Assembly: GCA_965644265.1 (NCBI GenBank)
Contig: OZ286469.1
Coordinates: forward strand, 74,462,001 to 74,526,000
DNA: 64,000 nucleotides
Direction of reading: 5' to 3'
Origin: Glycera tridactyla
Taxonomy: Eukaryota
Shown: piece after piece, positions 4,422 to 35,114 of the stretch
Position numbering within the stretch: position 1 is the stretch's first letter
Layout: the number at the start of each line of letters is the position of its first letter
Position numbers and translations under genes: made by a program
Notes under the pieces: model-generated
Database searches by the model: none
The model's input: only the letters and a program-made list of their open reading frames with translations
Told to the model about the DNA's origin: nothing

Positions 4422-4463
4422 GTACAGAGGAACTTAGACGGCAATTTTTTGAGCAACGCTCCG
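4422..4463 (+). CDS. Array exon A1, 42 nt: (G)TEELRRQFFEQRS
   Basis: tttattgtag|GTACAG...CTCCG|gtatta; phase 1-1, no stop. Confidence 0.7.
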
Positions 4464-5402
4464 GTATTATCTTCATCTATTTGTTTGTACAATATATCAT
4501 ATTTATGTATTGCTTCGGTATTGAGGTTGATATCATTTCAGTCAGTATCCCCTCCTTGTTGCCTGCATTAACAAAACCTAGTGATAAAAATATACATTTT
4601 TGGCTGTGATCTTCATTTATACAGCGAGAAGTGACACAAAACTGAGTATATGAAATTGCTTTATTATATTTTCTTCAATGTCCAAATTATCTCTCTTGAG
4701 TCAATTGTGCAATTATTGACCTCAAGCAGACAGTCCTTAACGTATCTCCACTGTCAGTCATGGCATAGCAGACCCATCACAGTGCCTTGGATATTCAATT
4801 AAGAAATCAATTTCCTTCCAAATCAATCATATTATCCCACCTTTTGGCATCATTGCAGTCTATGCATTTACCATTCTACTTGCTGATATTTCTAATGGTA
4901 TTTGATCATTATTCAGTTCCAATAATTTATGTTTTTTCTGGTATCAGGGTTTTAAAGATAATGAGTGATTTCTGATTTTGTGTTAGTCTGTTCTATTTGG
5001 ATTTGCAGGATAACAGGAGTCCACTTGTGATTTGTGATTCAAATTTGGCTGTACATTTTTGGATTTATTGGAATTTCTGTGGGCCTTTGACATTCTAAAA
5101 CATGATATGATGATGAAACAATGACAAATCATAGATCCAGTGGACTTGTGCTTATCTATGCAGTGCAAAAGATCTTTCAAATTTTGCCTTAACTTAACTG
5201 ATCTCAGCAAGGTCAAGATCATATACTCATTTTAAAGCTGGCATTTCTCATTTTACGACTCCAATAGATATTTCCAATTACAGTTATCAGGAAAACATAT
5301 CAAAAATCAATATCTTATTTTGACCTGTCTTATATCAGCATGTACCTTCACAAATATGGGTCTAGAATAGGTAGTTCCATCAACATGCATTCATTATTCC
5401 AG

Positions 5403-5444
5403 GGACGGATCAAGAATGGAAGACCTTCACTGTACAGTCCAATG
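5403..5444 (+). CDS. Array exon A2, 42 nt: (G)TDQEWKTFTVQSN
   Basis: ttattccag|GGACGG...CCAATG|gtattt; paralog of A4, A6, A9. Confidence 0.85.
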
Positions 5445-5603
5445 GTATTTTATTTACACTTTTTCATTCCTAGAAAGTTTGAAAATATTTACAGTAGTTT
5501 GATACAATCATCTTGTATTCAATTTATGCTTCTCTATGTCTTAATATATATGTATGTACCATGGCGCTAGCGTTATTCATCAAAATATTATGAAAACTAT
5601 TCT

Positions 5604-5742
5604 NNNNNNNNNNNNNNNNNNNNNNNNNNNNNNNNNNNNNNNNNNNNNNNNNNNNNNNNNNNNNNNNNNNNNNNNNNNNNNNNNNNNNNNNNNNNNNNNN
5701 NNNNNNNNNNNNNNNNNNNNNNNNNNNNNNNNNNNNNNNNNN
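5604..5742. other. Assembly gap (N run)
   Basis: 139 consecutive N; could hide an array exon. Confidence 1.
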
Positions 5743-6049
5743 TGTGCACACTGTTGTCCATGTTTCACATACATTTATTAGATTTCCCTGTTTAGTTGGA
5801 ATCGCAACACAAATCCTGAAATTATATTGTATAAAATCATAATCCAACATGACCAAATCAAAAGCTTCAGACACACACATGTACTGGAGATTCCCAGAGT
5901 TTTTGCATTAGCTGAAGACTTCCTGGGTCATGGGTAGGTCTGAACGAATAGGAACCAGACTTTTTACAATAGTGAGGAATTTATGGACGCAAGTGAAAGC
6001 TGAAACTGAACCGACCGGATGGAACTTCTTAGTTCACTTACATTTCCAG

Positions 6050-6088
6050 AGACACAGAAGAAGGAGGCCTCATCTGGACAAGAAAAGG
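6050..6088 (+). CDS. Array exon A3, 39 nt: (E)TQKKEASSGQEK
   Basis: catttccag|AGACAC...GAAAAGG|gtattt. Confidence 0.75.
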
Positions 6089-6932
6089 GTATTTCAATTT
6101 CTTTTTTCTGTTCTGCCTCATATATACATACATGTATACTCATATATCCAGTCCCTCAACCCCACTCACTAATTCTTTGCAAACACCAATTTCAGAATAC
6201 CTCATTTTGATTCATAAGATAGAATTTCTGTGAATAGCATTCATCTGATTCACAAGGCAAAGTGGCCAATGCCTTCATTTTTGAGGTTATATACTCATTT
6301 CACAACTGACATTCCTCATTTCACATATCCGATGAATATAGCTACATTTGAATGAAGTAGTGAAAGATACTGATTTAGTTGATTCACATATACTCACAAT
6401 GACATCGAAAGTATAAGAAGCTTTCAGGGTAGACCCTCTAGACCATTTCCTCTGCTATTGGCAAATGCGCTTGAGTAGCGTTGTTATGTCATGTGATCTT
6501 GTGGTTGGGATTGTATCACGTGACAGGTGGATCACCTCCCAATATATTGGTGGGAGGTTGTGCCAGCCCTGGTCCCTGCTGAGTGCTGGTTCTTCAGTGA
6601 TATGGATGGTCTTGGCCACCGCTCGGTGGAACCAGTCATTCTCTGTACGTGAAATAGTTGCACCAGCTCATTGTGCAGGTGAAAATGTACATGATTGGAT
6701 GCAAGGCCAAGGGAATCCCATGAATCAATCAAGAATCCTATATGCTCTTGTCCTGAACATTATCTCAATGATCACTGGCACTTTTTCTGATCGAAAATTG
6801 TCAGAAAAACCAAGAAATGATGTAGATCTCCACAAAGTATTTGATGTGAGAAACAAGGTGACAGAGGTAGCGTGATCACTGATGATCTGAAGGCAGTCAT
6901 TTGATTGTCTATAATCTGCATGCACCCAATTG

Positions 6933-7185
6933 CAGGGATGTGATTCTTCTGCAGATCCGCTTTTTTCCATGCATATGACAGCAAAGAGCATTCTCTGCCG
7001 ATTGTTTTTGCTTTTAGATCATGGAAATTGGACCAGTATTAGTGGAGATAGAGCACAATGTCTGTATGGAGTTCTTTTAGCCTTCAGTCACCAGTTGCTT
7101 GGGTTTGTTGATCACCAAAATCTTGGTATAAGTGCTCCCTGTCAGGTTTGCAGTGTTTTTTGGTCGTGAGCGGATCACATCTCTG
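6933..7185. mobile_element. MITE family 1 (TIR CAGGGATGTGAT), copy with 6-bp TSD
   Basis: cagggatgtgat...atcacatctctg flanked by caattg on both sides (6927-6932, 7186-7191); internal tattagtggagatagagcacaatg shared with other copies. Confidence 0.85.
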
Positions 7186-7250
7186 CAATTGGAAGAATGG
7201 ATTATTCAGTAGAGATGAGTATCAATATAGCAGGTCAATTACATTTTCAG

Positions 7251-7292
7251 GGACTGTTTATGAATGGCGGACGACAACCGTCCAGTCTTATG
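7251..7292 (+). CDS. Array exon A4, 42 nt: (G)TVYEWRTTTVQSY
   Basis: cattttcag|GGACTG...TCTTATG|gtatac. Confidence 0.88.
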
Positions 7293-7530
7293 GTATACTC
7301 TTTATTTATTTTGACATAGACGTGACTTTTGACTGGGACCAGACTTGTGAACATGCATATTTACATATGTATATACAATTCATCTCGATTTCACTTGTTT
7401 TTTGGAAGCTGTGAAATTCTCTAGCTTCCTTATTCCACAGATTTCTCAAGTGAGTCCGGCACCTTTATTACCTTCAATCAGTAGCGAGACTCGACAGGCC
7501 AAATTTGACATTGTATTGACTTCATATTCA

Positions 7531-7537
7531 TTATGTC

Positions 7538-7572
<35 letters not shown>

Positions 7573-7790
7573 ATGGGGGAGACATATAGAATTCGTATTG
7601 TCCGTCTGTCCGTCTGTCTGTCACAAAACCTCGTGAGCACGATTGTAGCAAAACTACTCATCCGAATTTGATGAAATTTGGCAGGCATACCCCCTGGGAG
7701 GGTCTAATGAACTGATTAGATTTTGGTCTATGTGACATGATTTTCAAGATCACCGGGGGCAAAAATTTCACTGAAATTTCACCAAAAAGG
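7531..7790 (+). mobile_element. Helentron-associated (HINE/DINE-1-like) non-autonomous repeat fragment
   Basis: Short inverted repeat tgtctcccc...ggggagaca followed by gtcc/gtct microsatellite and gaatttgatgaaatttgg core; this architecture is typical of DINE-1/HINE elements (recalled, not searched). Confidence 0.5.
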
Positions 7791-8046
7791 TACCCTAATT
7801 AAACTCAGTCTGTATTGTGACCTCTCCGAAATGAACGCATTTCTCATGCCTCTCCATTCATGTTATGTAATATTCTTCAGTCTCTGACAATGCTCTTTTG
7901 TCCTGCTCTAATGACTAGACGTTGATTTCATTTTCCCTCTCTCCTCAAACAAAAGCCCAAACTTAATTAACTTCCCTGTTTGTGTCTGCTCCTTGTTGCT
8001 ACCTGTGGATATCCAATGGCTATTATACTTGGCATATTGGTATATA

Positions 8047-8207
8047 CAGTCAAACCTCCTCTAAAGACCACCTCCCTATAAAGAACACCCTGAGCTGCGA
8101 CTGTGGTAGTATTCTCAACAGTGAATGACCTCTCTATAAAGACCACCTCCCTATAAAGGCCACTTTTTGATGTGACCGAAGGCGATCCTTATAGAGAGGT
8201 TCGACTG
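8047..8207. mobile_element. Tc1/mariner-type MITE, family 2
   Basis: ta|cagtcaaacct...aggttcgactg|ta; TA TSD; homologous in inverted orientation to 49442-49658. Confidence 0.8.
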
Positions 8208-8469
8208 TAAGTGCTGTTAGCAATTTGACTGTCATACCCCCTGTGTTGGTCCACTGGCGTGTTTTTGTCTCAAAGTTTGTATACCTCCTTCCCTAGACTA
8301 TGGATTTACATCTTGCATTTCAAGGTCACTGAGTGCAAAATGATTTCCGGGGTTTGTTCATAATTTGAGAGTGAAAATGTATTAGTTTTGTTCATATATT
8401 TCACTTTTCTCATTTACTCATCCTGTGACATCATGCACTCAGCGGGGCATTCACTCCCATTGAGTGTAT

Positions 8470-8700
8470 CTACAGGCTAGTGGTGATACACTGGCATTTT
8501 GAAGATGGTGCCAAAAGGTCAAAGGTCAAGGTCACAGGAGCTATTTTCAGAATTTGAGAATATGGACAAATCTCATTTGCTGAATTGTTCTTGTTTCCTG
8601 GGTCACTGATCAAGACCTGATCAAGAGCTTCCCCTGTCAGCAAAATTCCACTCAAACCGCTGAACCAAATTCAACTGAACTTCTCTGATGCCTAGGCATA
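8470..8700. repeat. Interspersed repeat fragment with ggtcaaaggtcaaggtcac motif (HINE core-like)
   Basis: Motif at about 8517-8536, common in molluscan Helentron-derived repeats (recalled); boundaries approximate. Confidence 0.35.
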
Positions 8701-9103
8701 TTCTCAAGGACAAATCCTACACAAAGAGACCCCTGTACCCCAGCACACCTCATACCCCAGGACACATTTTCGTACTTATGACTAGGTATACTACATCATT
8801 GGTCACTCAAAGGATAGTTGTCAACCATTAATGTCTATCTTTTCATGCTTACTTGAAGATGAATAAGCAAGCAGGTGGGATGCCAGGCATGTATACGGGT
8901 AGTGAATAATTACAAAGTCTGGGGGGAGACATATTGAGTGAGGAGGTGCCTCACTAAAATTCTAGTTAGATCAGATTTTATCCAATTCAAGAAAATATTT
9001 TGGTACTGTTGCATTTTTGTGAAGTTTCAAAGGTTTTCATCATGACCACAGAGAACATAGAGTACTCAAAACAATGTTCAAACATACCAGCTTACTATTG
9101 TAG

Positions 9104-9145
9104 GAAAACAGCCTGACAAGAAGGAAAGTCCAGGACAGCTACATG
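9104..9145 (+). CDS. Array exon A5, 42 nt: (G)KQPDKKESPGQLH
   Basis: tattgtag|GAAAAC...CTACATG|gtaata. Confidence 0.78.
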
Positions 9146-9929
9146 GTAATATATTTATAATTATGAGCAATGTCCCTAGTGATGGAAAATATGTTGGATG
9201 ATTTGTCAAACTTTGGATAGGGACTGATTCTCCCAGATCAGATTTTCACAATATCAGACTCTTTCACATTCCACCATATCTGTAATATGGATCTAAATGT
9301 GAGATATCATCATGTGTATTAAAAGAACTGCAATTCTTGTTTCTGTCATGAAAAGTTGGTGTACATGAGCAAACATTTTCTTCAATTGGACACAGGTTTT
9401 GCTAGAGTGATTTGTAATACTGTGGAGAGCAGCTCTGTCCGAAGTTAAGAAAATGAAGTGATGAAACTGTTGTGAAAGTAGTTGCAGGTTTTATAGATGA
9501 ATAGCACGTATAGATATGAAGAGCTTACAAAAACAACCAAAATTATTCGAATGTCAGATTCAGAGAGTAGTTGTGAAATAGTTCACTCAGAGAGGAAGTT
9601 AAATAGATGCAATTACTTGTGTACCCAATCTTATTGCAATAAGTATAAAGCTAGGCAGAACTCATCGAATCAATCATTCATCAGTCATCATTTTCTTGAA
9701 TATAAATATTTATCTCTCACTCTTCAGCATTTCTTTGCAAAACAACTTGCCTTCCCATGGTGATCACAACCCCCTCACACCAAATCTGTCTTCTTGTTGA
9801 CTAAACATTGGTCATGACGCAATAATCGATCAAAGAACTCGGGATTGATTGTACTTCAAAATAGACACTAATTATCATCGCCATCAGAAAGCCAGGATGG
9901 TAAAACTAATATCAGGCTCACTTTTGCAG

Positions 9930-9971
9930 GGGCACAACATGAGTGGCGGACTACAACTGTTCAGTCATATG
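9930..9971 (+). CDS. Array exon A6, 42 nt: (G)AQHEWRTTTVQSY
   Basis: cttttgcag|GGGCAC...TCATATG|gtatta; EWRTTTVQSY identical to A4 but with synonymous codon differences. Confidence 0.9.
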
Positions 9972-10334
9972 GTATTATCATTTTTCTATGGCATTCCATA
10001 TAACTTTTGTATGTATAGCATTGAGTAATTGAGTTTGATAGATCTGCATGCTGATTTGTAAATTTATTGATACTTCCAAAATAATCAGCGTAGAGTTGAT
10101 GTCTACTACATATCGTTCACTACAGCTCTTTGAATATCACCAATGAATACCACTATTGTGAAAACTAATGTATATATTACCGCACACATAAAGAAAAAAG
10201 ATCAGAAAGGTAGGAACACAGAAAGAAGCACCTGCTTTTTGAAATAAGTGGTGAGATATTTATTGAATATTGTACATTCAATGTGTATGATACAGAAATG
10301 ACTAGGATGCAAACATGTTCAATGACCATTGCAG

Positions 10335-10376
10335 GTACACAACCTATCAAGAAGCAGCACAATACATCAACTTATG
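10335..10376 (+). CDS. Array exon A7, 42 nt: (G)TQPIKKQHNTSTY
   Basis: ccattgcag|GTACAC...ACTTATG|gtacta. Confidence 0.82.
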
Positions 10377-10942
10377 GTACTATTTCACTTTATCTCTTCC
10401 CCCATATATATGTATCCATATCAGATAGTTTTATCCATCTCTTTTCATGAGAAATGTGTCCCTGTAGATGTAATTTACTTATGGTCTCTTGATGTATGCT
10501 CGTTTTGAGATGTATAACCCTATTCCTGAACATTATAAGTCACTAGTAAACCCCAAAGTTTTTGTCTGATGAAAGTATTGAACATAGTAAGTGAAGCATG
10601 GCTCAATGTATCATGTATATATTATCAATATTTAGCATATCATGGATGGTAGAGTGACACCATGCACCTTGATGGTATTTGTGTTCATTTGATCCTAATA
10701 CATTTGATATCTGCCCCATGCTACTTATCCCATCAAGCAAAATATGTGTGGTCTATCATCAGCTCAAAAGTCTATAGCGGTACACACTCTGAGAAGGACT
10801 AGGTGACAATCATTCGTACTCCATGGATTTCACTTAGCATTCACAGACCATTTGCCTGATCTCAAACATCACAAGATGCGCTGACCACCAAAGATCTTAT
10901 ATAATCCTGCTGGCTGCTACAGTGCTGGTTGTGTTATTGCAG

Positions 10943-10981
10943 GTTCCCAGGCTAAGACTCCAACAAGTGGACTCACTTATG
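10943..10981 (+). CDS. Array exon A8, 39 nt: (G)SQAKTPTSGLTY
   Basis: ttattgcag|GTTCCC...ACTTATG|gtataa. Confidence 0.82.
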
Positions 10982-11457
10982 GTATAAACTTGAATTTCCC
11001 AACCTGCTCGTCCAAGAAATACATGATAGGGATTTGGGGAAAGCTTGCTTTTTTGTATGTGAATGGGTATAATGCTACTATCAGAAGTCTCCAATGTGCT
11101 CATGACATGCGCAGGTAGGGGAGATCCCATGATTAAATGGAAAAGAGTGAATATTTTGATATTTTGGAGTGATATAAATTGAATTCAGAAACCATATATC
11201 TTTTGCTAATTCTCAAATTTCCCATGTTGTATTACTTATCATAAGAAAGGAGGAAGCTACTTCAATGACATCATATTTTCATAAGTATGTAATTGAAAAT
11301 AAATACTAGCTATTCTCAGGTTCACATTTCTTTCGAAAATCGAGAAATGAAGTGTGGAAGATGTTAACTAGCGATAAGAGCAAATAACATTGGCCTCATT
11401 CATGGGAGAGACCTTTTTGTGATGACCAAAATATACATTTGATATTGTCCGTTGCAG

Positions 11458-11499
11458 GATCAGAAAAGACATGGAAGACAGCTACGGTCCAATCTTATG
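11458..11499 (+). CDS. Array exon A9, 42 nt: (G)SEKTWKTATVQSY
   Basis: ccgttgcag|GATCAG...TCTTATG|gtaatc. Confidence 0.88.
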
Positions 11500-11813
11500 G
11501 TAATCACATCTTTGGTCATCTCTGGATGAAATTGATCAGATATGATACTGCTCTGTGAGACTATATTCTAAGTTTCTTTGTATGTTGACACCGTCAGGCA
11601 TTTTCTCAATGGAAGAGAATTGATATGTTAGGTATCAAATAAGGTTGTGTACAATACACCAGAACATGCATGCCAAATGTAACATAAAAAGCTCCAATTA
11701 TGATCTGTACTGTTACAAGAGATAACTTTCCCATTCACCGAATGCCATTTTTGAATTATCAAAGAGCAAGTCACTCTTATGAAACACTTTAGTTGGTGTT
11801 CTTGGTATTGCAG

Positions 11814-11852
11814 GAACTCAACAATCAAAGACTTCACCTCAACTGACCTATG
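11814..11852 (+). CDS. Array exon A10, 39 nt: (G)TQQSKTSPQLTY
   Basis: gtattgcag|GAACTC...ACCTATG|gtatgg; resembles A8. Confidence 0.82.
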
Positions 11853-12664: not shown

Positions 12665-12718
12665 GAACTCATCCTGGAAGGACCACACCAACCGGAACAG
12701 GACTTTTTTCATGTTATG
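12665..12718 (+). CDS. Array exon A11, 54 nt: (G)THPGRTTPTGTGLFSCY
   Basis: ttttcacag|GAACTC...TGTTATG|gtatat; GLFSCY family. Confidence 0.88.
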
Positions 12719-12768
12719 GTATATATCTTTACTAATCTATATTCATATATCAATATGTGTCATCCTAA

Positions 12769-12860
12769 TGATAATAATAATAATAATAATAATGATAACA
12801 ATAATAATAATAATGATAATTATAATAATAATGATGATGGTGACAATGATAATGATGATG
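12769..12860. repeat. (AAT)n/(GAT)n trinucleotide microsatellite
   Basis: taatgataataataataataat...gatgatgatg; explains the poly-N/poly-I ORFs in the track. Confidence 0.9.
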
Positions 12861-13124
12861 ACATGCAGTGGATATACAATATCGAAAAAGATTTCAATTT
12901 TGAAATTCATTCGATTTGAGCTCAGTAAGACATATATTTTCCCAATTATTTTGTTATCTCAAAAATCAACACTGTTCCCAGATGTTTGATTCTGAAATGA
13001 AATATTCATTATGTCAACAATAAATATTTCAGTCATTGTGGAAGTATAACCCCTGAATCTGTGTCTGATCGTAATCTGTTACTCATCAGTGCGTCTCAAA
13101 ATATTACATATCACATCCTTGCAG

Positions 13125-13172
13125 GTTCGACAGGGACAAAAAAGGAGACACAAACTTCAACAGGATATTATG
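13125..13172 (+). CDS. Array exon A12, 48 nt: (G)STGTKKETQTSTGYY
   Basis: tccttgcag|GTTCGA...TATTATG|gtatct. Confidence 0.82.
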
Positions 13173-13917
13173 GTATCTTAATTTTTTGGTTGTTCATATA
13201 CTTTCTTCATTATATCGCAATGTCTTGCTAATTCACTTATGTTGAAGAGCACCAAATAAAAGTATGCCTTTATTGCACCAAGTAGAAATTGATGTTATTA
13301 TAAGTATTTACTTTGTTCATGCTGTTATAAGAGTCAGATATGCCTGATATGAAGTTACTTCCTGAATGCACATGGACTTAATATCTCCCAATTTTTTTGC
13401 ATCCTAGAAAATAGTATGCATCTTAGTTAACACTCTTCAATTGTCCTCAGTGATTTCTTCCAATCCATTCAACTGAGATATTGGCTATCTATATTTCTGA
13501 ACAACCCCATCTCATTTATTCTATGAAATTTACGCCGTACGTAAGGTGAAAATTTCATAAATTTTTACCTCCGTTCAGGACCCAGAAGGATGAGTCTTGG
13601 AAGATCCCACCCATGCCCATTGCATGGGCGTCACAATATAGCCCAAATGGTGCTGACGATGTTAACCAGAACCAACCAACCCCCAAAACAGTGGATTGTC
13701 AACTGTTAATATTCAAGCTCACTACCTTAACTGGTGAGATATCAATGTTTGGACAGTGACCTGCTAAATATGATCACTTTTGAAATATCTGGCTGACACT
13801 CACCTTACACCACCTGATTTGAATTCATGGTCTATGAATGCATCTAAAAGTCAATTGAATAGATTGGTTCGATGATTGTCAGGGATTTCAGGCACAACTT
13901 CTCAATTTTCCTTACAG

Positions 13918-13965
13918 GTAAAAAGGGAATACAAGAAACTAGGATGAAGACTGGCCTTTTCTCTG
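13918..13965 (+). CDS. Array exon A13, 48 nt: (G)KKGIQETRMKTGLFS
   Basis: ttccttacag|GTAAAA...TTCTCTG|gtattt; shares TGLFS with the GLFSCY family. Confidence 0.8.
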
Positions 13966-14420
13966 GTATTTCTTTTGTTTTCTGATCACCTTAGGTAGAA
14001 AAAAGTATCATCAAGACAAACAATGGAAAAATTAAGTTGCTTTCAACTTATGATCTCTTCATTCTATAAGAGGAGATAGAGATAATTCTGTCACATCACT
14101 TATATGGGATCTGCCAGTCTGCTATTAACTCAACAAAAGTGGGAAGAGATAGATAGGTCAGCTATGATTTGTAAATTAATATCGAATGAATAAGTTACAT
14201 GTGGAAATAGTTTGAAGTGGCTTAGGTGCTGGCATATTATTTGATAACTTGATACTCCCATATAGACAACCAACAATAGCATGGGTAGGATATTTCAAAG
14301 CATTGCAGTTCACAGTAATATCTTTGATTGATTTATACCTAAATTGACAACAATAATTATGTGTAGTCATGTATGATGGAATCACCAGTTGACCCTTGAT
14401 TTGAACACCTACCATTGCAG

Positions 14421-14471
14421 GATCTCAGACAGATTTGAGGAATAGGACATCTTCCACTGGATCAAGCTATG
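14421..14471 (+). CDS. Array exon A14, 51 nt: (G)SQTDLRNRTSSTGSSY
   Basis: ccattgcag|GATCTC...AGCTATG|gtactt. Confidence 0.83.
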
Positions 14472-20351: not shown

Positions 20352-20354
<3 letters not shown>

Positions 20355-23517: not shown

Positions 23518-23571
23518 GAAGATTATGGACTCCCGAAAGAAGGCGAGCATTTCTTCGAAGATCATTTTATG
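23518..23571 (+). CDS. Array exon A25, 54 nt: (G)RLWTPERRRAFLRRSFY
   Basis: actattgcag|GAAGAT...TTTTATG|gtattg. Confidence 0.78.
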
Positions 23572-23916: not shown

Positions 23917-23964
23917 GTGTTGTGGATCTTGAGCGATCAAAGTCTATGGGATATTTTCCATCTG
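23917..23964 (+). CDS. Array exon A26, 48 nt: (G)VVDLERSKSMGYFPS
   Basis: atttttcag|GTGTTG...CCATCTG|gtacta; SKS family. Confidence 0.83.
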
Positions 23965-24737: not shown

Positions 24738-24785
24738 ATGTTTCTCAAATGGAGAGATCGAAATCAATCGGCCATTTATCGTCTG
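24738..24785 (+). CDS. Array exon A27, 48 nt: (D)VSQMERSKSIGHLSS
   Basis: ttcttttccag|ATGTTT...CGTCTG|gtattg; paralog of A26. Confidence 0.85.
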
Positions 24786-27353
24786 GTATTGTATTGGTAC
24801 TTCATTCAACATAGCAAATGTATGAAAATTTGAGAGGCAGCTAAAAATACCAGTACTGACTGAATATTGAAGTTTAGATTTATGCTCACTGACAAAGTCT
24901 GCTGTTATTTGTTGTCTGATAATATCAAGTCCAATATTTATAGAAGAGGAATCGCCACTTACCAGTCTACTTGGCTAGCGGAGTACTCTAAATAAGAAAT
25001 CAGAACAATTATAAGATCCAGCCATCTCCTTGATATGCCTTTGTAAAGAGCAATAAATAGGTCACTGTAAGTAACACACGACCTGGTTATCCTAGAGCTG
25101 ATGAAAATACATGGGCAGTGCATATGGACAGACATGGTATATGAAAATATTTCTACACTTTCAATGTGACAAATGAATCCATCAAGCCCCAACCTAATCA
25201 TGAAAATATATATCACAAATACAGTGCTCATCAAAAATGTTTTATAGGACCCGTATCTCACAACACAAGGGTGAACAGCAAAATTCTGCTTCACATAAAC
25301 CTTTTTGGTACATTTGTCCAGCGAAATACATATCTTACATACCAAGATCCACTGTACATATAACAGTGACGATATTGGCATCTTTATAGCATCTTGTCTG
25401 AGTAAATGAACAATGTTCGATGTTTTCTTGCCGCCATTCATGTCAATCCTTTCTTTTTGAGATTCTAGTACTCTGCCCTCTGGCAAAGTATTACTGTTTT
25501 TCGATAGCATCCTTCCTTCCTGTAAATGATTTCTTTTGGCTCATATCATCTCGCAACTTCTTTTTCTTTGGTAATCCATGATAGTTGACATGTTTGATGG
25601 TGTTTTTTGATAAGCTCTCGAAGTGGAAACCAGATTCATGGTGCAGCAATATTTTTTTCATTTATGATGTGCTGATCACAGGCTTTACTCATGATCTCCC
25701 TCAGTATGGGTACAAGGCAGGTGTTCCTAGTGGCATGTTCAATTGAAAGCAAACTGTTGAGTTGAATTCCACATGTTGAGCATATTCCAAATGAATATTT
25801 CACAGATCGTATCATTTTATTTGACAAAAACAGACTTCCATTTAGGTGGCAGTTCCTATTTGAATTTGACTAGTGATCAGCAACTGTACACTTGCAAAAA
25901 AATCTTTGATTTGAAGTATAATTTCTATAGAGTAAACGAAGCAAGAATATGTAATTGCATTGTTACGACGTGAACAATTAATCTTTCAATACATTATAAA
26001 GCGGCTTTGATTGGCCATTCTGATTGAAGTATTTGTTGGTATTCATTTTTGCAGCCCATGACCAAGAGAAGACTGTAGCTGGTTAGTCCTTTGTATTCTT
26101 ATGGCTTCCTCATATCTGACTGAAATCAAATGATTGATCTCTGAAAATATTAAAATCAATTGTTCTCTTTTATAAAAGTGCATAACATGTTGAACTAATA
26201 AGTTTCCAACGTACAAGAATGCAATCAACAAATCATACACTGGCTCATTTGATTGGAGTATCAGGAATTCAACGATGACCATGCTATTTTACATAGATCT
26301 ATCCAAAAATATCGTGAAATGATGTGATTATTTTGTAAAGGTCACAGAGCCTTCAAACAAGTAAGTGACAAAATATTAGGATCTTATAGCTGAGATTAAA
26401 GTGGGGCTGAGATGTGGGGGAATAATGCAAATTTTCGAATGAGGATCATGGATCCTTTTGAACAATTTTCACATACAATCGCTGTTTCACATCTTGAATT
26501 TGGAATTGCTGTGATAAGCCAGACACTAGGGGAATCAAAGAATGCTAGCTGGAATACTGGAATCAAATTTTGGAGTGACCATCCATGCAATCTCTAATTT
26601 GATGACCTAGATAGGGATATTTCCTTATACGTGCATAGGGGTTTGAATCATCCAAATTCACTGAGACTGGTGGCTTTGATTTATTGTTGATCAAAGATGC
26701 CTCCCTACGAATATCACCTATTCTACTCATGACATCACAGGCCAATGTATATTGCCTGGAAAATTGACAAAATTGTAGTTCAAATGAATGTTGAAACCAT
26801 ACTTCTCGCATTTCATGTAATATTGGCTAGACGAAAATTCTATTTGAATCATGTTATCGAATCTTCATATTGGTTAGAATCCATTGCAGAAGCTCAGATC
26901 ATAAGTTACATACTAGGCTTGAAAAACAAATTGCATCTCACACTCTTGCCTGCTATACATCCCTAGGTTGAAGTAAACATCTTCTCAAATCATCACATAC
27001 ATATGCTGATTCCCAATCAGGGAAAAATCAGCATCTATTATTAGTATCCTAAGTGGCAGCCACTATTGTGACTCACAAACATGTGCAAGCATATCTGTCA
27101 TTAAATTTTTCACTTGTGAGTTTCTTCATTCAATACCAGCATTTCAATCCAGTCAGTTGGTATGGCAGTTGTAATATAAGGGGAACCAAAGAGATTGATA
27201 AGTATTCAATGGATATGAATCATTCTGGGGTTGAAAGAAACAATATTGTGTGATCCTTGTTTGATATCAGATAAAGTACATGCCAGGGTATGAGGTCATA
27301 TATAAAAAACAAAACTAATCTTCACGTCACAGTACATTTCATTGATTTTTCAG

Positions 27354-27407
27354 GGGCTCAATGGGAGAGGACCACTTCAACAGAAACGGGAATTTACACT
27401 GCTTCTG
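27354..27407 (+). CDS. Array exon A28, 54 nt: (G)AQWERTTSTETGIYTAS
   Basis: atttttcag|GGGCTC...CTTCTG|gtatca. Confidence 0.8.
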
Positions 27408-27936
27408 GTATCAAAACTTATTTGTTTTATATCATGGGAGGACTTTGTCCCAGTATCTATCCACACAGTGCATGATTTATACTTGTGCTAAGGAAATTAA
27501 TCATGACAAACACAATGACACACTATTCTCTTGCATTATCAATTATTTCTTCAAATCATGGATTTCGAAATTGACTTTTTCGAAATTGATCATTGCCATT
27601 CATATTATGACTCTAGAGCTGAAGAATGGATGAAATCGATTAATATCATGCATGATGAAGATTGAAGTTCAACTACATCACAGGGCTCTATGTTGGCCGA
27701 AGTATTTGATAGTTGATATTTTGGTAGGCCGTGCCAACTGTTGGTAGCTGATATATACATTTTCGATTACAATCTCAAATTTTGAAGGGCAGCTGCATCC
27801 TAACTTTTGAAATATGGTAGTCAGAGGGTACATTTGGTAGCCCTCTGACATCTCGCCCATGAATGGCTTTATGACACTACTTACCCTTCACAGCCATCCT
27901 GATATAACCTTTCACTGTTTACCACTCTTTTCACAG

Positions 27937-27990
27937 AAACTAAACGAAAGAGGACGTCATCTATGGGGGCAGGACTATTTTCATGTTATG
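27937..27990 (+). CDS. Array exon A29, 54 nt: (E)TKRKRTSSMGAGLFSCY
   Basis: cttttcacag|AAACTA...TGTTATG|gtactt. Confidence 0.88.
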
Positions 27991-28488
27991 GTACTTCTAT
28001 TTTCTCATACCATTTGGGAATGTGGTCATAATGTAGCACCTATTTTCTGGTATATATGACAGTTGTCAACAAATTTTGACCTCTCATGTTTCCGATTGCT
28101 GACAGTGTCAACATTCTCAACTAAGTACTGAATTCTGCATAATACTGAGAGAATGACACCTTGTGTATCATAAATTTTCACCTTCAGTTCGCGACCTGGA
28201 ATGATCATACCCAATTCGCCTTGTATAGGCATTGCAACACAGCTCATAAGGTGCTATTGGTACATAAAACAACCACCCAACCAACCAACTTGAAAGAATT
28301 GCGATAGGGGTTGAGTTTAACCAGCTGGACTCTGTATGTATATGAGTCGTCATGTCATTGTAGTGAATGTCCCTGGCAGCGGTGCCTTCAAGTCCTGAAT
28401 GCATGATCCTTTGGGCTGATATTCCAACAAACCATCAGGTGTTTAGCATCAGCACTAGTCTCACATTGATGATACTTTGTTTGCACAG

Positions 28489-28542
28489 GTGGCCAAACAG
28501 GGAGGACTTCACCATATGACTCTGGACAGTTCTTATGCTATG
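28489..28542 (+). CDS. Array exon A30, 54 nt: (G)GQTGRTSPYDSGQFLCY
   Basis: tttgcacag|GTGGCC...TGCTATG|gtatta. Confidence 0.86.
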
Positions 28543-28895
28543 GTATTATGTCTTCATATAATATTGATAAGTTTCGCATTCAGGTCTCATTGCATTTTGT
28601 GGCAGATATGATGAATTCAAGTACAATTTCAACTTTGCAACCGGTTATATTCGACTTGCAGTCAAAAACTGAACATTCCATCCTATCAGTCACATTCCCT
28701 GTCAACAACAAATTTATCAAAAACATCGTTCATATCAATGAGGACTGTGAGTATCATTCATGTTTCATGAAATAATTCTTGTTTTCTATCTTTGCTAGAC
28801 ATACATGCTTTCCATACACCAATACATCACAACATCCTCTAGCAAATTACATGGACATACATGAATATGCATTCTCTCCTCCTTTTTTTTGACAG

Positions 28896-28949
28896 GATCT
28901 CCAAGGGACAGAAATTCTCCATCAGGAAGTGGATTATTTTCATGTTATG
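28896..28949 (+). CDS. Array exon A31, 54 nt: (G)SPRDRNSPSGSGLFSCY
   Basis: tttttttgacag|GATCTC...TGTTATG|gtacat. Confidence 0.88.
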
Positions 28950-29381
28950 GTACATGATACAGATTTTTATAATAATGAACCCATTCATTGAACCAAGAGC
29001 AATTATGATGGAGTATGCCTCAAATATCATGACTCTATATAGAATAAACTACTGGTTGATAACCATCAGACTTTCAGTGGGTTGAAGACATTCTGTGATC
29101 AGCAGGGAAAGATGATGACGATTCAATCATAAGGGAAACCTTTCTTCTGCCAAAGTATTATCCAACTCTAGGAAGTATTAACGTTGGTACTACTGCAATT
29201 GAATATCATGCCAAGACTCATTGGTAAATCTGCTACATTTTTGTCTAGTATCAGTGAATTTGTGTGCTAGAATGGGTGGAAGTGGTTACATAATGTATGC
29301 ATATTGTGAGTTTGTGTGTATGTTTGTGTGTGAGAGAGATGTATCATCTCTTACCTTGGTATCTCACTGTTGCTATTGCAG

Positions 29382-29423
29382 ACCGACGTGAACAGTTCAG
29401 AACATCTGTCAGCAAACCTATTG
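29382..29423 (+). CDS. Array exon A32, 42 nt: (D)RREQFRTSVSKPI
   Basis: ctattgcag|ACCGAC...CCTATTG|gtacta. Confidence 0.75.
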
Positions 29424-29954: not shown

Positions 29955-30056
29955 ACACAAATTCAACGGAATATGAACCAAAATCTGTTGGACAGACATA
30001 TGAAACAAAGAAATATGAGCAGATGCATGGAGCAAAATCTGTTGGACAATCTTATG
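29955..30056 (+). CDS. Array exon A33, 102 nt: (D)TNSTEYEPKSVGQTYETKKYEQMHGAKSVGQSY
   Basis: cttcttttcag|ACACAA...TCTTATG|gtatct; internal duplication KSVGQ[T/S]Y. Confidence 0.85.
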
Positions 30057-30693
30057 GTATCTCTTTTGTTTTTCTCATTAAGACAACATGGAACTGACAA
30101 TATTTTGACGGAAGCAATGGTCAGTAAGATTTGCTCAGATTGGCAGAAAAGATTTTCATAATCTTGTATCATGCTCAGCTTTGCAGAAAAGATTTTCATA
30201 ATCTTGTATTATGTACCAATGGCCAGTGTCTTCCACTTTGGTATCTGGATCTGAATTATTATGTCGTTCCATTCTGAGCCTATCACTTGTCCTGAATAAT
30301 CCCATCCTTTATTCTTTGAATGGGGCATCTTGGTATGGCCCAGATGTTGCCGATTAGATGAATAAGGTCAAACAACCAACCAACCAAGTGTCAAGAATCT
30401 CGTGGAGTGGATGTCTAATGATGCTCCTGACATGACATTACAGCAAAAGTATCCACAGTGAGGATTCAGTGGAGATCTATCTCTTTCAGATAGTCTTTTT
30501 AGATTCAGCTTCACAGACTGTATTGGATTTACTGAGATTGAATGTATACTAGAACTTTATTGAGAGAGAGAGAGAGGGAGGGGGAGAGAGAGAATGAGAA
30601 TGAGAATGTACCTAAAGCTAACCCAGACGTGTCATTGATAATTTTGGCATTTCAATCATGAATGATAGAGCACTGTTTTTTTCCCATTTTCAG

Positions 30694-30738
30694 GGTCCCA
30701 GAAACAGACACAGACAAACAACATTGGACAGACATATG
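30694..30738 (+). CDS. Array exon A34, 45 nt: (G)SQKQTQTNNIGQTY
   Basis: cccattttcag|GGTCCC...ACATATG|gtatat. Confidence 0.86.
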
Positions 30739-31179
30739 GTATATGATTTTCAGAATACATTACCTTTGTTTGTTTATGACTTGAGGGACATATGATGTTG
30801 GATAATTAGTTCTAGCAACTCCCCCACCAATGCAGTCATCTCCTGTCTTAAGATTGTATGCATACATGAGATGGTTAACTGTGGTATCGCACAATATGAT
30901 ACTTTGTATCAAAGAAATCAGCTGACAGATTAAACTGGGAAGTTCCATGATTCTGTGTGTATGTGGGTGTGGGTGTGTGTGTGTGTGTGTGTATGAGGGT
31001 GTGTTCATTCCCTAGAACTTGTCTTTAGATGGATATTGGTGTAGCATTAGATTTTGTTCAGTAAATTCCCCTTATGGATGAAAAGAAACTGCCTACAATA
31101 TGTGGTGGTACCTTCACATCAATGCAAATTCACTGGGAACACTGACTTACTCAAGAATAATGTATGATGTGTGTTGCAG

Positions 31180-31224
31180 GAACTTCATCTAAGCAGTATG
31201 AGTCTTCAGCTAGACATTCATATG
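31180..31224 (+). CDS. Array exon A35, 45 nt: (G)TSSKQYESSARHSY
   Basis: tgttgcag|GAACTT...TCATATG|gtattt. Confidence 0.84.
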
Positions 31225-31650
31225 GTATTTTGTTATCATTTTTCATATCAAATAGTAGGCCAGGAAAGGAAAGCTCCATGGATATGTTTCAAAGCTGCTT
31301 CACTGCTTTGGTACATGGGAATATGTTGGGAATGGGGGCAATAGTACAGGAATTGTGACTGAACAAATCACACTCTCACCAACCTTCATTTTTTTCAATG
31401 ATAGATCGTAAGACCTATAAACACACCTCCTCTGCATTAGATGATGTACTTACACCGACTGACTGACGGATCTGCTTGATCGAAACTTCTGACTGTATGT
31501 TTGCATTTGACATACTGACTGTATAGCCTACTCAGTATCATCAATGAATTACTTCCTTGAAGAGGGCATAAAATCAGCATCATATGCATGCATATTTTAT
31601 CATGGATCAGCACTGATTGACTTGAGAATTATGTATGGTATGTCTTGCAG

Positions 31651-31698
31651 AATCTTCATTGAAGCGGCAACAGTCATCTTCAGTCGGCCATTCATATG
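31651..31698 (+). CDS. Array exon A36, 48 nt: (E)SSLKRQQSSSVGHSY
   Basis: tcttgcag|AATCTT...TCATATG|gtattc. Confidence 0.84.
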
Positions 31699-32722
31699 GT
31701 ATTCCATTATCATTATTCATATCAGATTGTAGGCAATGAGTGTGTGGAATCAACATCACATGTGTCCATATACAGATTTATCATGAATCATTCACTTTTG
31801 TGAAGAGCCTTGAAAAGAAAAAGACATCCACAGACTCATGGTACATGATCAGATATTTACATAGAGGTATAGGCATATTTCGATTAATCCCATCACAACG
31901 TCATATTGCGTTCAGGTTTTGCAAGAGTTATGCTTGCAGGAGACTGAGCATCCAGCTTTCATTGATACATGACATACATAACCCTCTGTTTTGTTGAACT
32001 ATCCCATCAAGCCGAATTTTCCTTGTTCCAAGTTCTGTGCTTCGCAAAAAAGAAAAGACAAAAGAATCATAGCTATCGGAGTAGAAGGAAGTGTTGGCTT
32101 CCAGCCAGTTACATAGTTAGATATGCCATTGTCAGGTTCACTCTGTTCGTATTGTCTAGATAGAGGTATGTCCGAACTGTCAGCTACTTCCACATGACAA
32201 CCTTTCAGGTTCCCTATCATCTTGTGTTCAAGGTCTGTGAGGGTGATGGCAGGGGAGAGAACATCTAGCTTTCATTGACCAGGAACACACAGCATACATA
32301 ATCCTGTGGGTCAATACATGCTGTTAAACCTCTGACAAACATACAGATATAAACAAACAGTTTCCCCCCCCCCCCCAATAAAAACCGTGATATTATGCAG
32401 TTGGTGAACGTTTTAAGACATGTTATTCCCATGAATAGGGGTATAAAGCAATGAAGTGTTCGATTTTGGACAAAATATCAAAAGAGTACCTTTTGAAACT
32501 GAAATGTTCATATTCAGCTATTTACACTCTCTACAGTAGATCTTTGGCATTTCATGCAATTATCTCATGAGTAAATTGATGATACAAGTTCATGGATCTC
32601 AGTGCCTGCCTTTAGATGGGGAGAGGAAACTAAATAGCAGCCTGTAGCAATAGTCGAACTTCATTATGATCCCGGTGTATTCTAGTCAAAAGCATTCATA
32701 CAGCTCATCCTTTTCTTTGTAG

Positions 32723-32767
32723 GTACCAAAGTTGAGAAGACATACACTGAGCGCGCATATGGTGGTG
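32723..32767 (+). CDS. Array exon A37, 39/42/45 nt: (G)TKVEKTYTERAY[G][G]
   Basis: ttttctttgtag|GTACCA...CATATG|gtg|gtg|gtattt. Confidence 0.82.
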
Positions 32768-33409
32768 GTATTTTCTGTTTTTAAATGGCTCACCTTAACT
32801 TGATTGTTGTAGACTCACAAGAATTTATCAGATGAGTGACAGCAGTGTACTTTGGGTGGACATTCATTGATTGCGCTGCATTTCTGCGCTGTTGTTATGT
32901 ACAATTCTATGATGAGCTGTAGCGCTTTTGCGTGACATCATATTGGCGCTATGAATATTTCATTCCATTACTTGCAGTGAACATTTTATCTCTTGCTTTT
33001 GCAATTACATTCACAGAGAATGAATTCTCTCCACCCCCACTTCCATTGGAGGTACACGCAGACTCTCCAGAACCAATTCACCGCTGAAATGAGCTTCTTG
33101 CTTTGTATGGCTACAAATGTATTTGATGGGACAGATAACAATAAGATTCCCATATTTTTGGAGATTAGAAAAAGTGCTTTTGGTAATATCAGTGTGACCC
33201 AGAATTGATGCAGTGCCCTCTTGACAGCCCATGGGTTGGGAGAACCCATGTGAGCCATTTGATTGGAAGTATTTTTCGGATACATATGAGTGAATGATTG
33301 AATGAATGGATCAATCAATCAATCAATTGAAAAAAAAGCACATGTCTGAAAAATGCATCATTCAGTCTCAGTATAAATCTTATGTGAGTGAGATGTCTTG
33401 ACATTGTAG

Positions 33410-33454
33410 GTGCTCTACCTGGGAAGTCGAAATCAATTGGATATTTATCTTCTG
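33410..33454 (+). CDS. Array exon A38, 45 nt: (G)ALPGKSKSIGYLSS
   Basis: acattgtag|GTGCTC...CTTCTG|gtactt; SKS family. Confidence 0.83.
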
Positions 33455-33892
33455 GTACTTGTCTTTCCATTATCTTTATATCTATAGATCATTGTAGCAT
33501 AGCTGAAACTGAGATGACACAAGTCAGTAAGTTGAGAATCCTGTAATGTCATTTCCGTGGTGTTTCAGTTATACATGTTCTTGATATTTGGTAATCAGGT
33601 TTCTGGTAGACACATTTGTTTTGTTTTGTTTGCTAACTCTGATTCCAGCCTCATTGTGTTCATTCAATTATCTTAATGTAATTAAATTGTTGCTGTATTA
33701 AGATTGATCGATTGGCAGATTGACATTTAGGAAATGTACTATGCCTTGGTATTCTATTGCTTGGTATTGAACTAAAGTATCCAGAGAATCATTCTTCAAC
33801 CCAACTTGGATGTTGTACAGGTGGTTTGAGTGTGACAGACATCACGAAGACTAAATGAACTTTGTTGAAATTTTGTTTGAATTTCATTTCAG

Positions 33893-33934
33893 GGACAAAG
33901 ACTGACGGGAATACGTATCTTAACGGTTCATATG
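33893..33934 (+). CDS. Array exon A39, 42 nt: (G)TKTDGNTYLNGSY
   Basis: tttcatttcag|GGACAA...TCATATG|gtacta. Confidence 0.84.
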
Positions 33935-34678
33935 GTACTAGCCATTTTTGCTATTATTTCACACCGATCATCTGACTATATAATGACAGCATTTTTAATG
34001 AAAACAAGCGACGGTTAGATATACTACTTCAAATAGTATTTTGGGTCATCAATTTCCTGACTATTGATATGATTTAAAAAAAAAAATTGGGGGGGGGGGG
34101 GGGAATCACTACCGTAGAGGTATCAACATTTCAGGACTCTGCAATATAGACTTCATGATGATCATTTCCTACAGATTTGGTCGACTTGATTCCCTTCATG
34201 GGCTTATTTCGACCAATGAAAAGTAAGCAAATGATAGACTGGAATTCTGTAACAGGAAAGAGGGTACTTATAGTGCTTATGCTAAATTGCTTCATCTTGC
34301 TCATTGGTCTATAGGTCTGTGCTACAGGTTAGATTTTCCTCCATCATATCCTTGATCATGTTCATCTGGAATTTCATTCATAATTTCTTTTCCATATCAT
34401 AATACATACCATACATTTATTTCTGCACTCTATATATTGCTTTGTTTGCCAGAAACCTTCCACACCTTTACTGTCCCCCTGTGAACATATCCTGTACTCT
34501 ATTGTTAAATCTTGAAGATGGCCCACATTCAAGATTTATGAGATCAGAATATAGGATTGAATCCAGGTGGGTAGCGAGTCACATCATGTGAGATGATGTT
34601 CCTAGTGGGATTGGATGGTTTATTGCAAACAAATTGAACCCTTAACAAGTTGCCGGAACTAGGTATTTCTTATTTCAG

Positions 34679-34720
34679 GTGGCCATTGGGTGAGACGGAC
34701 CTATGTTGGACAATCATATG
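34679..34720 (+). CDS. Array exon A40, 42 nt: (G)GHWVRRTYVGQSY
   Basis: tcttatttcag|GTGGCC...TCATATG|gtatta. Confidence 0.85.
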
Positions 34721-35042
34721 GTATTAATTCAATTTTATTGTACTTTCTTTATCCAGATGTATCATATCCTGCTTTTAGAAATCCGATGACACACCACCCG
34801 CATGTACCAGAGATATCAACCAATCACATTGGTTACGGCTTTTTGTGTTGCACACAGTGCTTCACATATGATATCTTAGTGCATGACAGGAATGGGAATT
34901 GTCATTCCATAGTTTTAACTGTGATATCAGTGGAATGTGTAACAGCACATAAGTTGTATGGCATAAAAGCAATCAATCATGCTGCATATACTAGGTTACA
35001 GTGATTTTTCACAGGTCATTGATGAAGTCTTTACTGTTTCAG

Positions 35043-35114
35043 GCAAACCACAGCAGCAACAGCCAGCACCACCACCACCACAGTCATGGAAGAAGTCCCC
35101 GAAACACACTTATG
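35043..35114 (+). CDS. Array exon A41, 72 nt: (G)KPQQQQPAPPPPQSWKKSPKHTY
   Basis: ctgtttcag|GCAAAC...ACTTATG|gtatta. Confidence 0.84.

What the first reader, a model, noticed from the sequence alone, without database searches (positions are those of the whole stretch)
4422..35114. Array of 41 frame-symmetric short exons upstream of the ABLIM/UNC-115 linker: a possible combinatorial splicing cassette
Seen: 41 AG-bounded, stop-free exons in about 31 kb, mostly a few hundred bases apart. All are phase 1-1 with lengths divisible by 3, and all end in G|GTA. 34 of 41 open with a Gly codon when joined; 27 of 41 end in Tyr. Several are clear paralogs with synonymous differences (e.g. A4/A6), which points to coding selection. 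The first conventional ABLIM exon (50382) also has a phase-1 acceptor, so any subset can be joined to it in frame. All 41 together would add about 780 aa. Inference: this is a tandem-duplicated cassette that could diversify the linker between the LIM domains and the dematin-like region, by multi-exon skipping or Dscam-like mutually exclusive choice. I do not know of such an array in this gene family. Caveat: I found exons by pattern, so the divisible-by-3 result is partly circular, and linkage to ABLIM is inferred from strand and phase only.
Basis: partly seen in the sequence, partly recalled or inferred. Interest (0 to 1): 0.93.

Follow-up and report, generated by a model that had tools for sequence, protein, structure and literature searches.

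The report
Exon array in ABLIM-like gene linker
A real tandem array of 42 very short, frame-preserving exons sits in the flexible linker region of an actin-binding (ABLIM/dematin-type) gene of an invertebrate; it would add up to about 790 disordered, tyrosine-dotted residues, but whether the exons are used in combinations remains untested.

Summary
I recover the exon array on the + strand (4422-35114) and find one more exon (22908-23102), giving 42 exons, 2379 nt and 793 aa. All are phase 1-1 and end in G|GTA. Phase 1 has no stops; the other two frames have 15 and 39. Controls give 0-3 such exons against 41 here.

Paralogous exons are 62-81% identical while their flanks are at random level. 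Differences fall mostly on third codon positions, so these are old coding exons under selection.

The downstream exons match AbLIM_anchor + villin-headpiece proteins, best those of annelids. It ties the array's side of the 15-kb gap to the ABLIM-like gene. No LIM exon lies in the window.

Array donors are uniformly weak (ATG|GTAYT, +5G in 2 of 42). This fits regulated cassette use, but I had no RNA data. I found no sign of Dscam-like exclusive choice.

Same-phase exon arrays (tropoelastin, titin PEVK) and many-cassette ABLIM linkers (amphioxus, isoform numbers up to X45) are already known. The size and tandem origin of this array are new for the family.

The scan's first readers noted other symmetric exon arrays elsewhere in this genome, not this one.

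The parts
4422..11852 (+). Array exons 1-10: 4422-4463, 5403-5444, 6050-6088, 7251-7292, 9104-9145, 9930-9971, 10335-10376, 10943-10981, 11458-11499, 11814-11852 (39 or 42 nt each)
   Evidence: Exons 2, 4, 6 and 9 form one family (motif E-W-R/K-T-x-T-V-Q-S-Y) and alternate with 13-14 aa S/T/Q/K modules. Exons 4 and 6 are 74% identical, against 32-37% in their 60-nt flanks. The N gap 5604-5742 is intronic, between exons 2 and 3.
12665..19498 (+). Array exons 11-21: 12665-12718, 13125-13172, 13918-13965, 14421-14471, 14879-14920, 16730-16780, 17403-17468, 17857-17907, 18166-18210, 18909-18962, 19460-19498
   Evidence: Exons 11 and 20 (54 nt, ending G-L-F-S-C-Y) are 81% identical with 5 synonymous codon changes; their flanks are 35% identical. 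The repeat finder recovered them without any exon input (families D3/D4).
20022..23102 (+). Array exons 22-25, the long Q/S-rich ones: 20022-20141, 20749-20871, 22010-22096 (second in-frame donor at 22114), 22908-23102 (not in my first 41)
   Evidence: Repeat D11 aligns the end of exon 22 with the second donor of exon 24, so 22114 may be the ancestral donor. These open stretches have no Pfam match.
23518..29423 (+). Array exons 26-33: 23518-23571, 23917-23964, 24738-24785, 27354-27407, 27937-27990, 28489-28542, 28896-28949, 29382-29423
   Evidence: Exons 29-32 belong to the G-L-F-S-C-Y family. Exons 27 and 28 share an E-R-S-K-S-x-G motif with exon 39 (repeat D9).
29955..35114 (+). Array exons 34-42: 29955-30056, 30694-30738, 31180-31224, 31651-31698, 32723-32767, 33410-33454, 33893-33934, 34679-34720, 35043-35114
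   Evidence: Exon 34 is two fused modules (internal repeat D18). Exons 36 and 37 share about 40 nt of downstream intron as well (D8, 81%), which marks a more recent duplication.
42787..42804 (+).
   Evidence: Joined to exon 50382 it gives M-M-S-A-L-G-D, identical to P0076. Bivalve and annelid homologues carry G-M-M-x-L at the same place.
50382..50564 (+). Dematin-homology (AbLIM_anchor) exon holding the I-E-R-D-D-W-P-A-P-P motif; 183 nt, phase 1-1
   Evidence: It gave 72 hits at E<=0.001. The full-length hits carry VHP, AbLIM_anchor and in some cases LIM domains.
52036..52182 (+). Coiled-coil-like ABLIM exon, 147 nt, phase 1-1, donor GTGAGT
   Evidence: 61% identity to P0008 residues 267-307.
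52591..52707 (+). ABLIM exon with the L-D-P-R-S-A-S-R motif, 117 nt, phase 1-1, donor GTAAGT
   Evidence: 68% identity to P0008 residues 309-346.
56956..57063 (+). ABLIM exon (S-P-S-R-D-L-D-Y-R-P-R-L-H-S-M-D-D ...), 108 nt, phase 1-1, donor GTAAGT
   Evidence: 72% identity to P0076. The headpiece exons lie beyond the end of the window.

Best explanation
The array is a set of 42 genuine, anciently duplicated coding exons inside an ABLIM/dematin-family gene. It lies upstream of the conserved micro-exon and the dematin-homology exons. Each exon encodes one short module (mostly 13-18 aa) of a polar, disordered segment. S+T+G+Q make up 47%, net charge is positive, and a Tyr usually sits at the exon end, so junctions read Y-G. 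Every border is phase 1, so any subset of exons keeps the frame. The donors are uniformly weak, which makes regulated cassette inclusion the most likely use. Inclusion would lengthen the linker before the actin-binding C-terminal part by up to 793 aa and add up to 71 aromatic residues. By analogy with human abLIM1, whose disordered region needs its Phe/Tyr residues to phase-separate, this could tune self-association and actin cross-linking, or simply reach. Shown: the exons, their selection, their frame logic and the gene family of the downstream exons. Inferred: membership in one transcript, alternative use and function.
For: Enrichment over controls is 41 against 0-3. Phase 1 has 0 stops, against 15 and 39 in the other frames. 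Exon-limited paralogy: 62-81% identity in exons against about 33% in flanks, recovered blind by the repeat finder. Differences at codon positions 1/2/3 are 67/45/99. Exon GC is 44% against 37% in introns, with strong codon-position composition. The joined reading frame stays open through the micro-exon and anchor exons: 949 aa, 0 stops. The downstream exons match LIM/AbLIM_anchor/VHP proteins. The junction M-M-S-A-L-G-D is identical to P0076. No Pfam domain occurs in any long incidental ORF on either strand. Donors have +5G in 2 of 42, against 5 of 5 in the conserved downstream exons; the one-sided exact probability computed by hand is about 1e-5. Many-cassette ABLIM linkers are annotated in amphioxus, with isoform numbers up to X45. 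Human abLIM1 has more than 20 isoforms, and its phase separation depends on aromatic residues (PMC9304016).
Against: No transcript evidence was reachable. A search with exon 23 found nothing. A long incidental ORF of the window is not on record in the contig collection, and no hit to the anchor exon exceeded 75% identity, so data from this species seem to be absent. No homologue retrieved carries such an array; the longest ABLIM-like hits are 921 aa. The conserved G-K-F-Y...H-F-H-R-P-E-N-F-S-Y segment, which precedes the micro-exon in homologues, was not found in the array or anywhere in the window, so the array's position relative to it is unknown. No LIM exon is in the window. A 7.7-kb stretch without recognised exons separates exon 42 from the micro-exon.
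Confidence: 0.6

Rival explanations
1. All 42 exons are constitutive. The gene simply encodes a long fixed disordered linker built by exon duplication, with little or no combinatorial use.
For: The acceptors are good and uniform (T at -6 in 40 of 41, T at -5 in 36 of 41, CAG or TAG in all). Purifying selection acts on the exon families compared. The frame is open throughout.
Against: All donors depart from the strong GTAAGT/GTGAGT form used by four of the five conserved exons of the same gene, and +5G occurs in 2 of 42. Short exons with weak donors are typical of regulated exons. Homologues from other phyla join the conserved segments without any such insert.
Confidence: 0.2
2. The array belongs to a separate upstream gene on the same strand, for example a repeat-built structural protein, that ends before the micro-exon at 42787.
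For: Homology links only the micro-exon and later exons to ABLIM. The array itself has no detectable similarity to any homologue. A 7.7-kb gap follows exon 42.
Against: No phase-compatible terminal exon or further array-like exon was found in 35115-42786, and no start exon in 1-4421. Exon 42 ends in the same phase and base that the micro-exon needs. The micro-exon and all four later ABLIM exons in the window are also phase 1-1.
Confidence: 0.1
3. This is a Dscam-like mutually exclusive array, with exactly one exon (or one per cluster) chosen per transcript.
For: There are many tandem, partly paralogous exons between constant parts.
Against: Lengths range from 39 to 195 nt. Several unrelated families are interleaved. 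Including two or more exons never shifts the frame. All introns are at least 258 nt. No intronic 8-10-mer is shared by more introns than in shuffles, so there is no candidate selector or docking element.
Confidence: 0.03
4. The exons are decaying relics of a former coding array, or pattern-matching artefacts, and are no longer expressed.
For: There is no expression evidence. The candidates were found by pattern.
Against: Phase 1 has no stops in 2379 nt, against 15 and 39 in the other frames. All 42 splice-site pairs are intact. There is an excess of third-position and synonymous change. Controls give 0-3.
Confidence: 0.05

Closest known systems
Tropoelastin gene: all exon borders phase 1:1, allowing cassette-like splicing (bioRxiv 10.1101/2024.12.03.626628)
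   Same: Every border has the same phase 1, usually with a Gly codon split at the junction. Short exons each encode one module of a disordered protein. Parts arose by exon replication. Removing any exon keeps the frame.
   Different: [quoted passage not shown] Here the modules are polar, Tyr-terminated and sit in an intracellular actin-binding protein. No sequence similarity was seen.
Titin PEVK region: about 100 short, highly repetitive, alternatively spliced exons (PMC6469411)
   Same: It is a tandem-duplicated array of short exons encoding a disordered spring or linker. Exon number sets linker length. Standard gene finders annotate it poorly.
   Different: The composition differs (P/E/V/K against S/T/G/Q with Tyr). 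The host protein differs. Splicing is documented for titin and unknown here.
Cassette-rich linkers of ABLIM genes: amphioxus ABLIM1-like with isoform numbers up to X45; human abLIM1 with more than 20 isoforms (PMC9304016)
   Same: Same gene family and same region, the disordered stretch before and within the dematin-homology part. Isoforms differ by several in-frame insertions or deletions in different combinations.
   Different: In the nine amphioxus isoforms aligned there are about eight unrelated variable segments, and the longest isoform retrieved is 921 aa. Here there are 42 exons, mostly paralogous, adding up to 793 aa. No retrieved homologue has this.
Dscam-type mutually exclusive exon clusters
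   Same: Many tandem paralogous exons lie between constant exons.
   Different: Exon lengths are unequal, no selector or docking sequence was found, and nothing enforces exclusivity.

Membership tests
ABLIM / dematin family (actin-binding LIM proteins) | Dematin-homology (AbLIM_anchor, PF16182) region | tested here: met
   Exons 50382-50564, 52036-52182, 52591-52707 and 56956-57063 align collinearly at 44-72% identity with proteins that carry PF16182 and/or VHP. Single exons alone gave no Pfam hit.
ABLIM / dematin family (actin-binding LIM proteins) | C-terminal villin headpiece (VHP) domain | not testable with these tools
   No match lies beyond 57155 in the window. The headpiece exons must lie past position 64000.
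ABLIM / dematin family (actin-binding LIM proteins) | N-terminal LIM domains (these separate ABLIM from dematin-like forms) | not testable with these tools
   No LIM-like exon lies in 1-4421 or elsewhere in the window. Any LIM exons would lie upstream of the window. In Paralvinella a LIM gene model lies about 9 kb upstream of the anchor exon.
ABLIM / dematin family (actin-binding LIM proteins) | Conserved G-K-F-Y ... H-F-H-R-P-E-N-F-S-Y segment before the micro-exon | tested here: not met
   A profile built from 13 homologues finds nothing in the array protein or in any + strand frame of the window. A by-eye resemblance of exons 40 and 42 was not supported (blastp E>0.2).
Same-phase cassette exon arrays (tropoelastin / titin PEVK kind) | All exon borders in one phase, lengths multiples of 3 | tested here: met
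   42 of 42 array exons and the 5 following exons are phase 1-1.
Same-phase cassette exon arrays (tropoelastin / titin PEVK kind) | One peptide module per exon, generated by tandem exon duplication | tested here: met
   Exon-limited repeat families were found. One pair still shares intron sequence (D8).
Same-phase cassette exon arrays (tropoelastin / titin PEVK kind) | Documented alternative inclusion of the exons | not testable with these tools
   No RNA data for this genome could be reached. The weak donors are only suggestive.
Dscam-type mutually exclusive exon clusters | Alternative exons of near-equal length and common ancestry | tested here: not met
   Lengths run from 39 to 195 nt, with at least four unrelated families interleaved.
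Dscam-type mutually exclusive exon clusters | Docking and selector complementary intronic elements | tested here: not met
   No 8-10-mer is shared among introns beyond shuffle level. This is a coarse test, and degenerate selectors could escape it.
Schistosome-type micro-exon genes (MEGs) | Runs of symmetric exons of 36 nt or less between signal-peptide and terminal exons of a secreted protein | tested here: not met
   Exons are 39-195 nt. No signal-peptide exon was found in the window. The downstream exons are cytoskeletal ABLIM exons. The MEG definition is taken from my own knowledge.

The most novel reading that the evidence does not exclude
The 42 exons are used combinatorially, by tissue or stage, to set both the length of the ABLIM linker and the number of aromatic 'sticker' residues. 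This would tune condensate formation and actin cross-linking. It would be the largest cassette array known in an actin-binding LIM protein and an independent, intracellular parallel to titin PEVK and tropoelastin.
Probability: 0.3. Interest if true: 0.65.

Novelty: new variant of a known kind. Interest (0 to 1): 0.45.

Why it matters
If the exons are expressed, one gene could produce actin cross-linkers whose disordered linker varies from 0 to about 790 extra residues, with 0 to about 70 extra aromatic residues. That gives a natural series for testing how linker length and sticker number control the phase separation and actin bundling reported for abLIM1. It is also a clean case of how a phase-1 intron region can be filled by exon duplication. 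It is a practical warning too: arrays of 39-54 nt exons are easily missed by gene prediction, as is known for titin PEVK.

Tried and rejected
1. Direct evidence from proteins or transcripts of this species. A search with exon 23 inside its 135-aa open stretch found no candidate. A look-up of a 183-aa incidental ORF of the window found no record. The best hit to the anchor exon is only 75% identical and comes from a fragmented assembly with 2.6-kb contigs.

2. Homology of the last array exons to the conserved G-K-F-Y/H-F-H-R-P-E-N-F-S-Y segment. It looked plausible by eye but failed blastp and a profile search, so I rejected it.

3. An apparent extension of exon 50382 upstream (L-L-T-M-F-S resembles homologues). 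There is no AG in the open stretch, so this is only the acceptor tract.

4. Arrays in relatives. The Paralvinella and Ridgeia loci show no such exons within reach. The many hits in Ridgeia come from an 83-bp satellite.

5. Enriched intronic splicing motifs. The top words (AATAAT, TGTGTG) include the units of the ATT- and GT-type microsatellites seen in some introns. I did not check whether those tracts account for the counts. TGCATG is not enriched.

6. Pfam on single exons and on long incidental ORFs gave nothing. Rfam and tRNA scans gave nothing.

7. I could not identify the organism. The sequences closest to the conserved exons are annelid or annelid-derived.


Full report
Observation.

A scan for AG-bounded, stop-free, phase 1-1 segments ending in G|GTA recovers 41 exons on the + strand between 4422 and 35114. 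A rescan with longer allowed lengths adds a 42nd, 22908-23102, of 195 nt. Together they make 2379 nt, or 793 aa.
- Lengths are mostly 39-54 nt.
- Introns are 258-2568 nt, median 531.

Is it more than chance?

- With a mild filter on the acceptor tract and on hydrophobic content, the array region yields 41 candidates. The opposite strand of the same region yields 0, the + strand downstream 3, the rest of the minus strand 2, and ten shuffles 0-3.
- With no frame condition at all, segments that are multiples of 3 and open in phase 1 are the dominant class.
- Within the 42 exons, phase 1 has no stop in 751 codons. The other two frames have 15 and 39.

The assembly gap.

The Ns at 5604-5742 lie in the intron between exon 2 (ends 5444) and exon 3 (starts 6050). 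No exon or reading frame crosses them, and the frame logic does not depend on the gap's length. Continuity across the gap, or an extra exon hidden in it, cannot be judged. I did not try to fill it.

Coding evidence.
- Same-length paralogous exons are 62-81% identical, while the 60 nt on either side are about 33% identical, which is random level. Pairs show 2-5 synonymous codon changes.
- Over 14 such pairs, differences at codon positions 1/2/3 are 67/45/99.
- The repeat finder, given no exon coordinates, returns the same families, with similarity ending at the splice sites (D3, D4, D9).
- It also shows one younger duplication that still includes about 40 nt of intron (exons 36 and 37, D8), an exon made of two fused modules (exon 34, D18), and a second in-frame donor for exon 24 at 22114 (D11).
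- Exons are richer in G+C than introns (44% against 37%) and have strong codon-position composition.

These are old duplicates kept under protein-level selection.

Which gene?

The 60-aa product of exon 50382-50564 finds 72 proteins at E<=0.001. The full-length ones carry villin headpiece, AbLIM_anchor and, in several, LIM domains.
- Four further stretches of the window align collinearly with them: 52036-52182, 52591-52707, 56956-57063, and a newly recognised 18-nt micro-exon at 42787-42804.
- The micro-exon joined to exon 50382 reads M-M-S-A-L-G-D, identical to P0076. Bivalve and annelid proteins carry G-M-M-x-L at that point.
- So the conserved gene reaches at least to 42787, only 7.7 kb from exon 42.
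- The micro-exon and all later exons in the window are also phase 1-1.
- Joining the 42 exons, the micro-exon and the next three exons gives 949 aa without a stop.
- No further array-like or terminal exon was found between 35115 and 42786, and no start exon in 1-4421.
- No long incidental ORF on either strand has a Pfam domain.

The closest sequences are annelid or annelid-derived. P0008 comes from a gregarine transcriptome, GHVU01. That its origin is the worm host is my inference.

Limits of the linkage.
- The array itself has no detectable similarity to any homologue.
- The conserved G-K-F-Y...H-F-H-R-P-E-N-F-S-Y segment, which precedes the micro-exon in homologues, is not in the array or anywhere in the window. 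It therefore lies upstream of the window or is lost.
- No LIM exon is in the window.
- In Paralvinella the E-N-F-S-Y exon and the anchor exon are 3.3 kb apart with no array between them. A 2-kb single open exon lies further upstream.
- No retrieved ABLIM-like protein up to 1447 aa carries such an insert.

The array therefore looks lineage-specific.

Splice signals.
- Acceptors are uniform: T at -6 in 40 of 41, T at -5 in 36 of 41, and CAG or TAG in all 41.
- Donors are uniform but weak, with consensus ATG|GTA(T/C)T. Position +4 is a pyrimidine in 39 of 42, +5 is T in 30 of 42, and +5 is G in only 2 of 42.
- The five conserved downstream exons have GTATGT, GTAAGT, GTGAGT, GTAAGT and GTAAGT, so +5G occurs in 5 of 5.
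- The rest of each intron has drifted to random similarity. Retention of this non-consensus donor therefore suggests selection for a weak site, as expected for regulated cassette exons. This is an inference, not evidence of splicing.
- No intronic word is shared among introns beyond shuffle level. TGCATG is not enriched.

Product and likely role.
- The full product would be 47% S+T+G+Q, with 109 K+R against 64 D+E.
- In the first 41 exons only 14% of residues are hydrophobic (ILVMFWC).
- It would hold 45 Tyr, 15 Phe and 11 Trp. Twenty exon junctions read S/T/C-Y-G.

This is a disordered, sticker-and-spacer type sequence. Human abLIM1 phase-separates through the disordered part of its dematin-homology region, and changing 25 Phe/Tyr residues to Ser abolishes this (PMC9304016). 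The most likely role is therefore a variable-length disordered linker whose exon content sets reach and aromatic valency. This is inference by analogy.

Comparison with what is known.
- The architecture, with all borders in phase 1, Gly at junctions and one module per exon, is that of tropoelastin.
- The idea of a tandem array of short spring exons is that of titin PEVK.
- Within the family, nine amphioxus ABLIM1-like isoforms from records numbered up to X45 differ by about eight in-frame segments in several combinations.
- New here are the scale (42 exons, up to 793 aa), the mostly paralogous tandem origin, and the Tyr-terminated module.
- Dscam-like exclusive choice is not supported.

Verdict.

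The finding is a new variant of a known kind, of moderate interest until RNA evidence is available.

First-stage notes of this scan mention other symmetric exon arrays in other genes of the same genome. I did not test them, and they did not affect the score.

Noticed in passing
window 42787-42804: An 18-nt phase 1-1 micro-exon (G-M-M-S-A-L) with a long pyrimidine tract. It is conserved in position and sequence across annelid, nemertean and bivalve ABLIM/dematin-like proteins.
   Followed up: yes
window 8089-8209 and 49440-49560: A 121-nt inverted repeat, 90% complementary, with arms 41 kb apart. The arms bracket array exons 5-42 and the micro-exon. They are probably two copies of a dispersed element in opposite orientation. 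In pre-mRNA they could pair and loop out the array. This was not tested.
   Followed up: no
window 6967-7159, 45119-45311, 54485-54677: A dispersed repeat of about 190 nt in three direct copies (68-87% identical) in introns of the gene. One copy ends 90 nt upstream of array exon 4.
   Followed up: partly
window 22096 / 22114: Array exon 24 has two in-frame G|GTACT donors 18 nt apart. Comparison with exon 22 suggests that the distal one is the ancestral donor.
   Followed up: partly
L003 3958-5961 (Paralvinella palmiformis contig): Between a LIM gene model and the anchor/headpiece model lies a 2-kb single ORF (667 aa) with 12-aa tandem repeats. It is annotated as joined to the conserved E-N-F-S-Y exon. 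The ABLIM gene there seems split into three models and may have a giant linker exon instead of an exon array.
   Followed up: partly
L004 2170-7530 (Ridgeia piscesae contig): An 83-bp tandem satellite upstream of the dematin-like gene produces dozens of false 'symmetric exon' hits with the same pattern scan. This is a caution for pattern-based exon finding.
   Followed up: no
window 7540-7572, 12742-12864, 20285-20362, 23405-23462: Homopolymer and microsatellite tracts (poly-C, ATT-type, CA and GT repeats) lie inside array introns.
   Followed up: no
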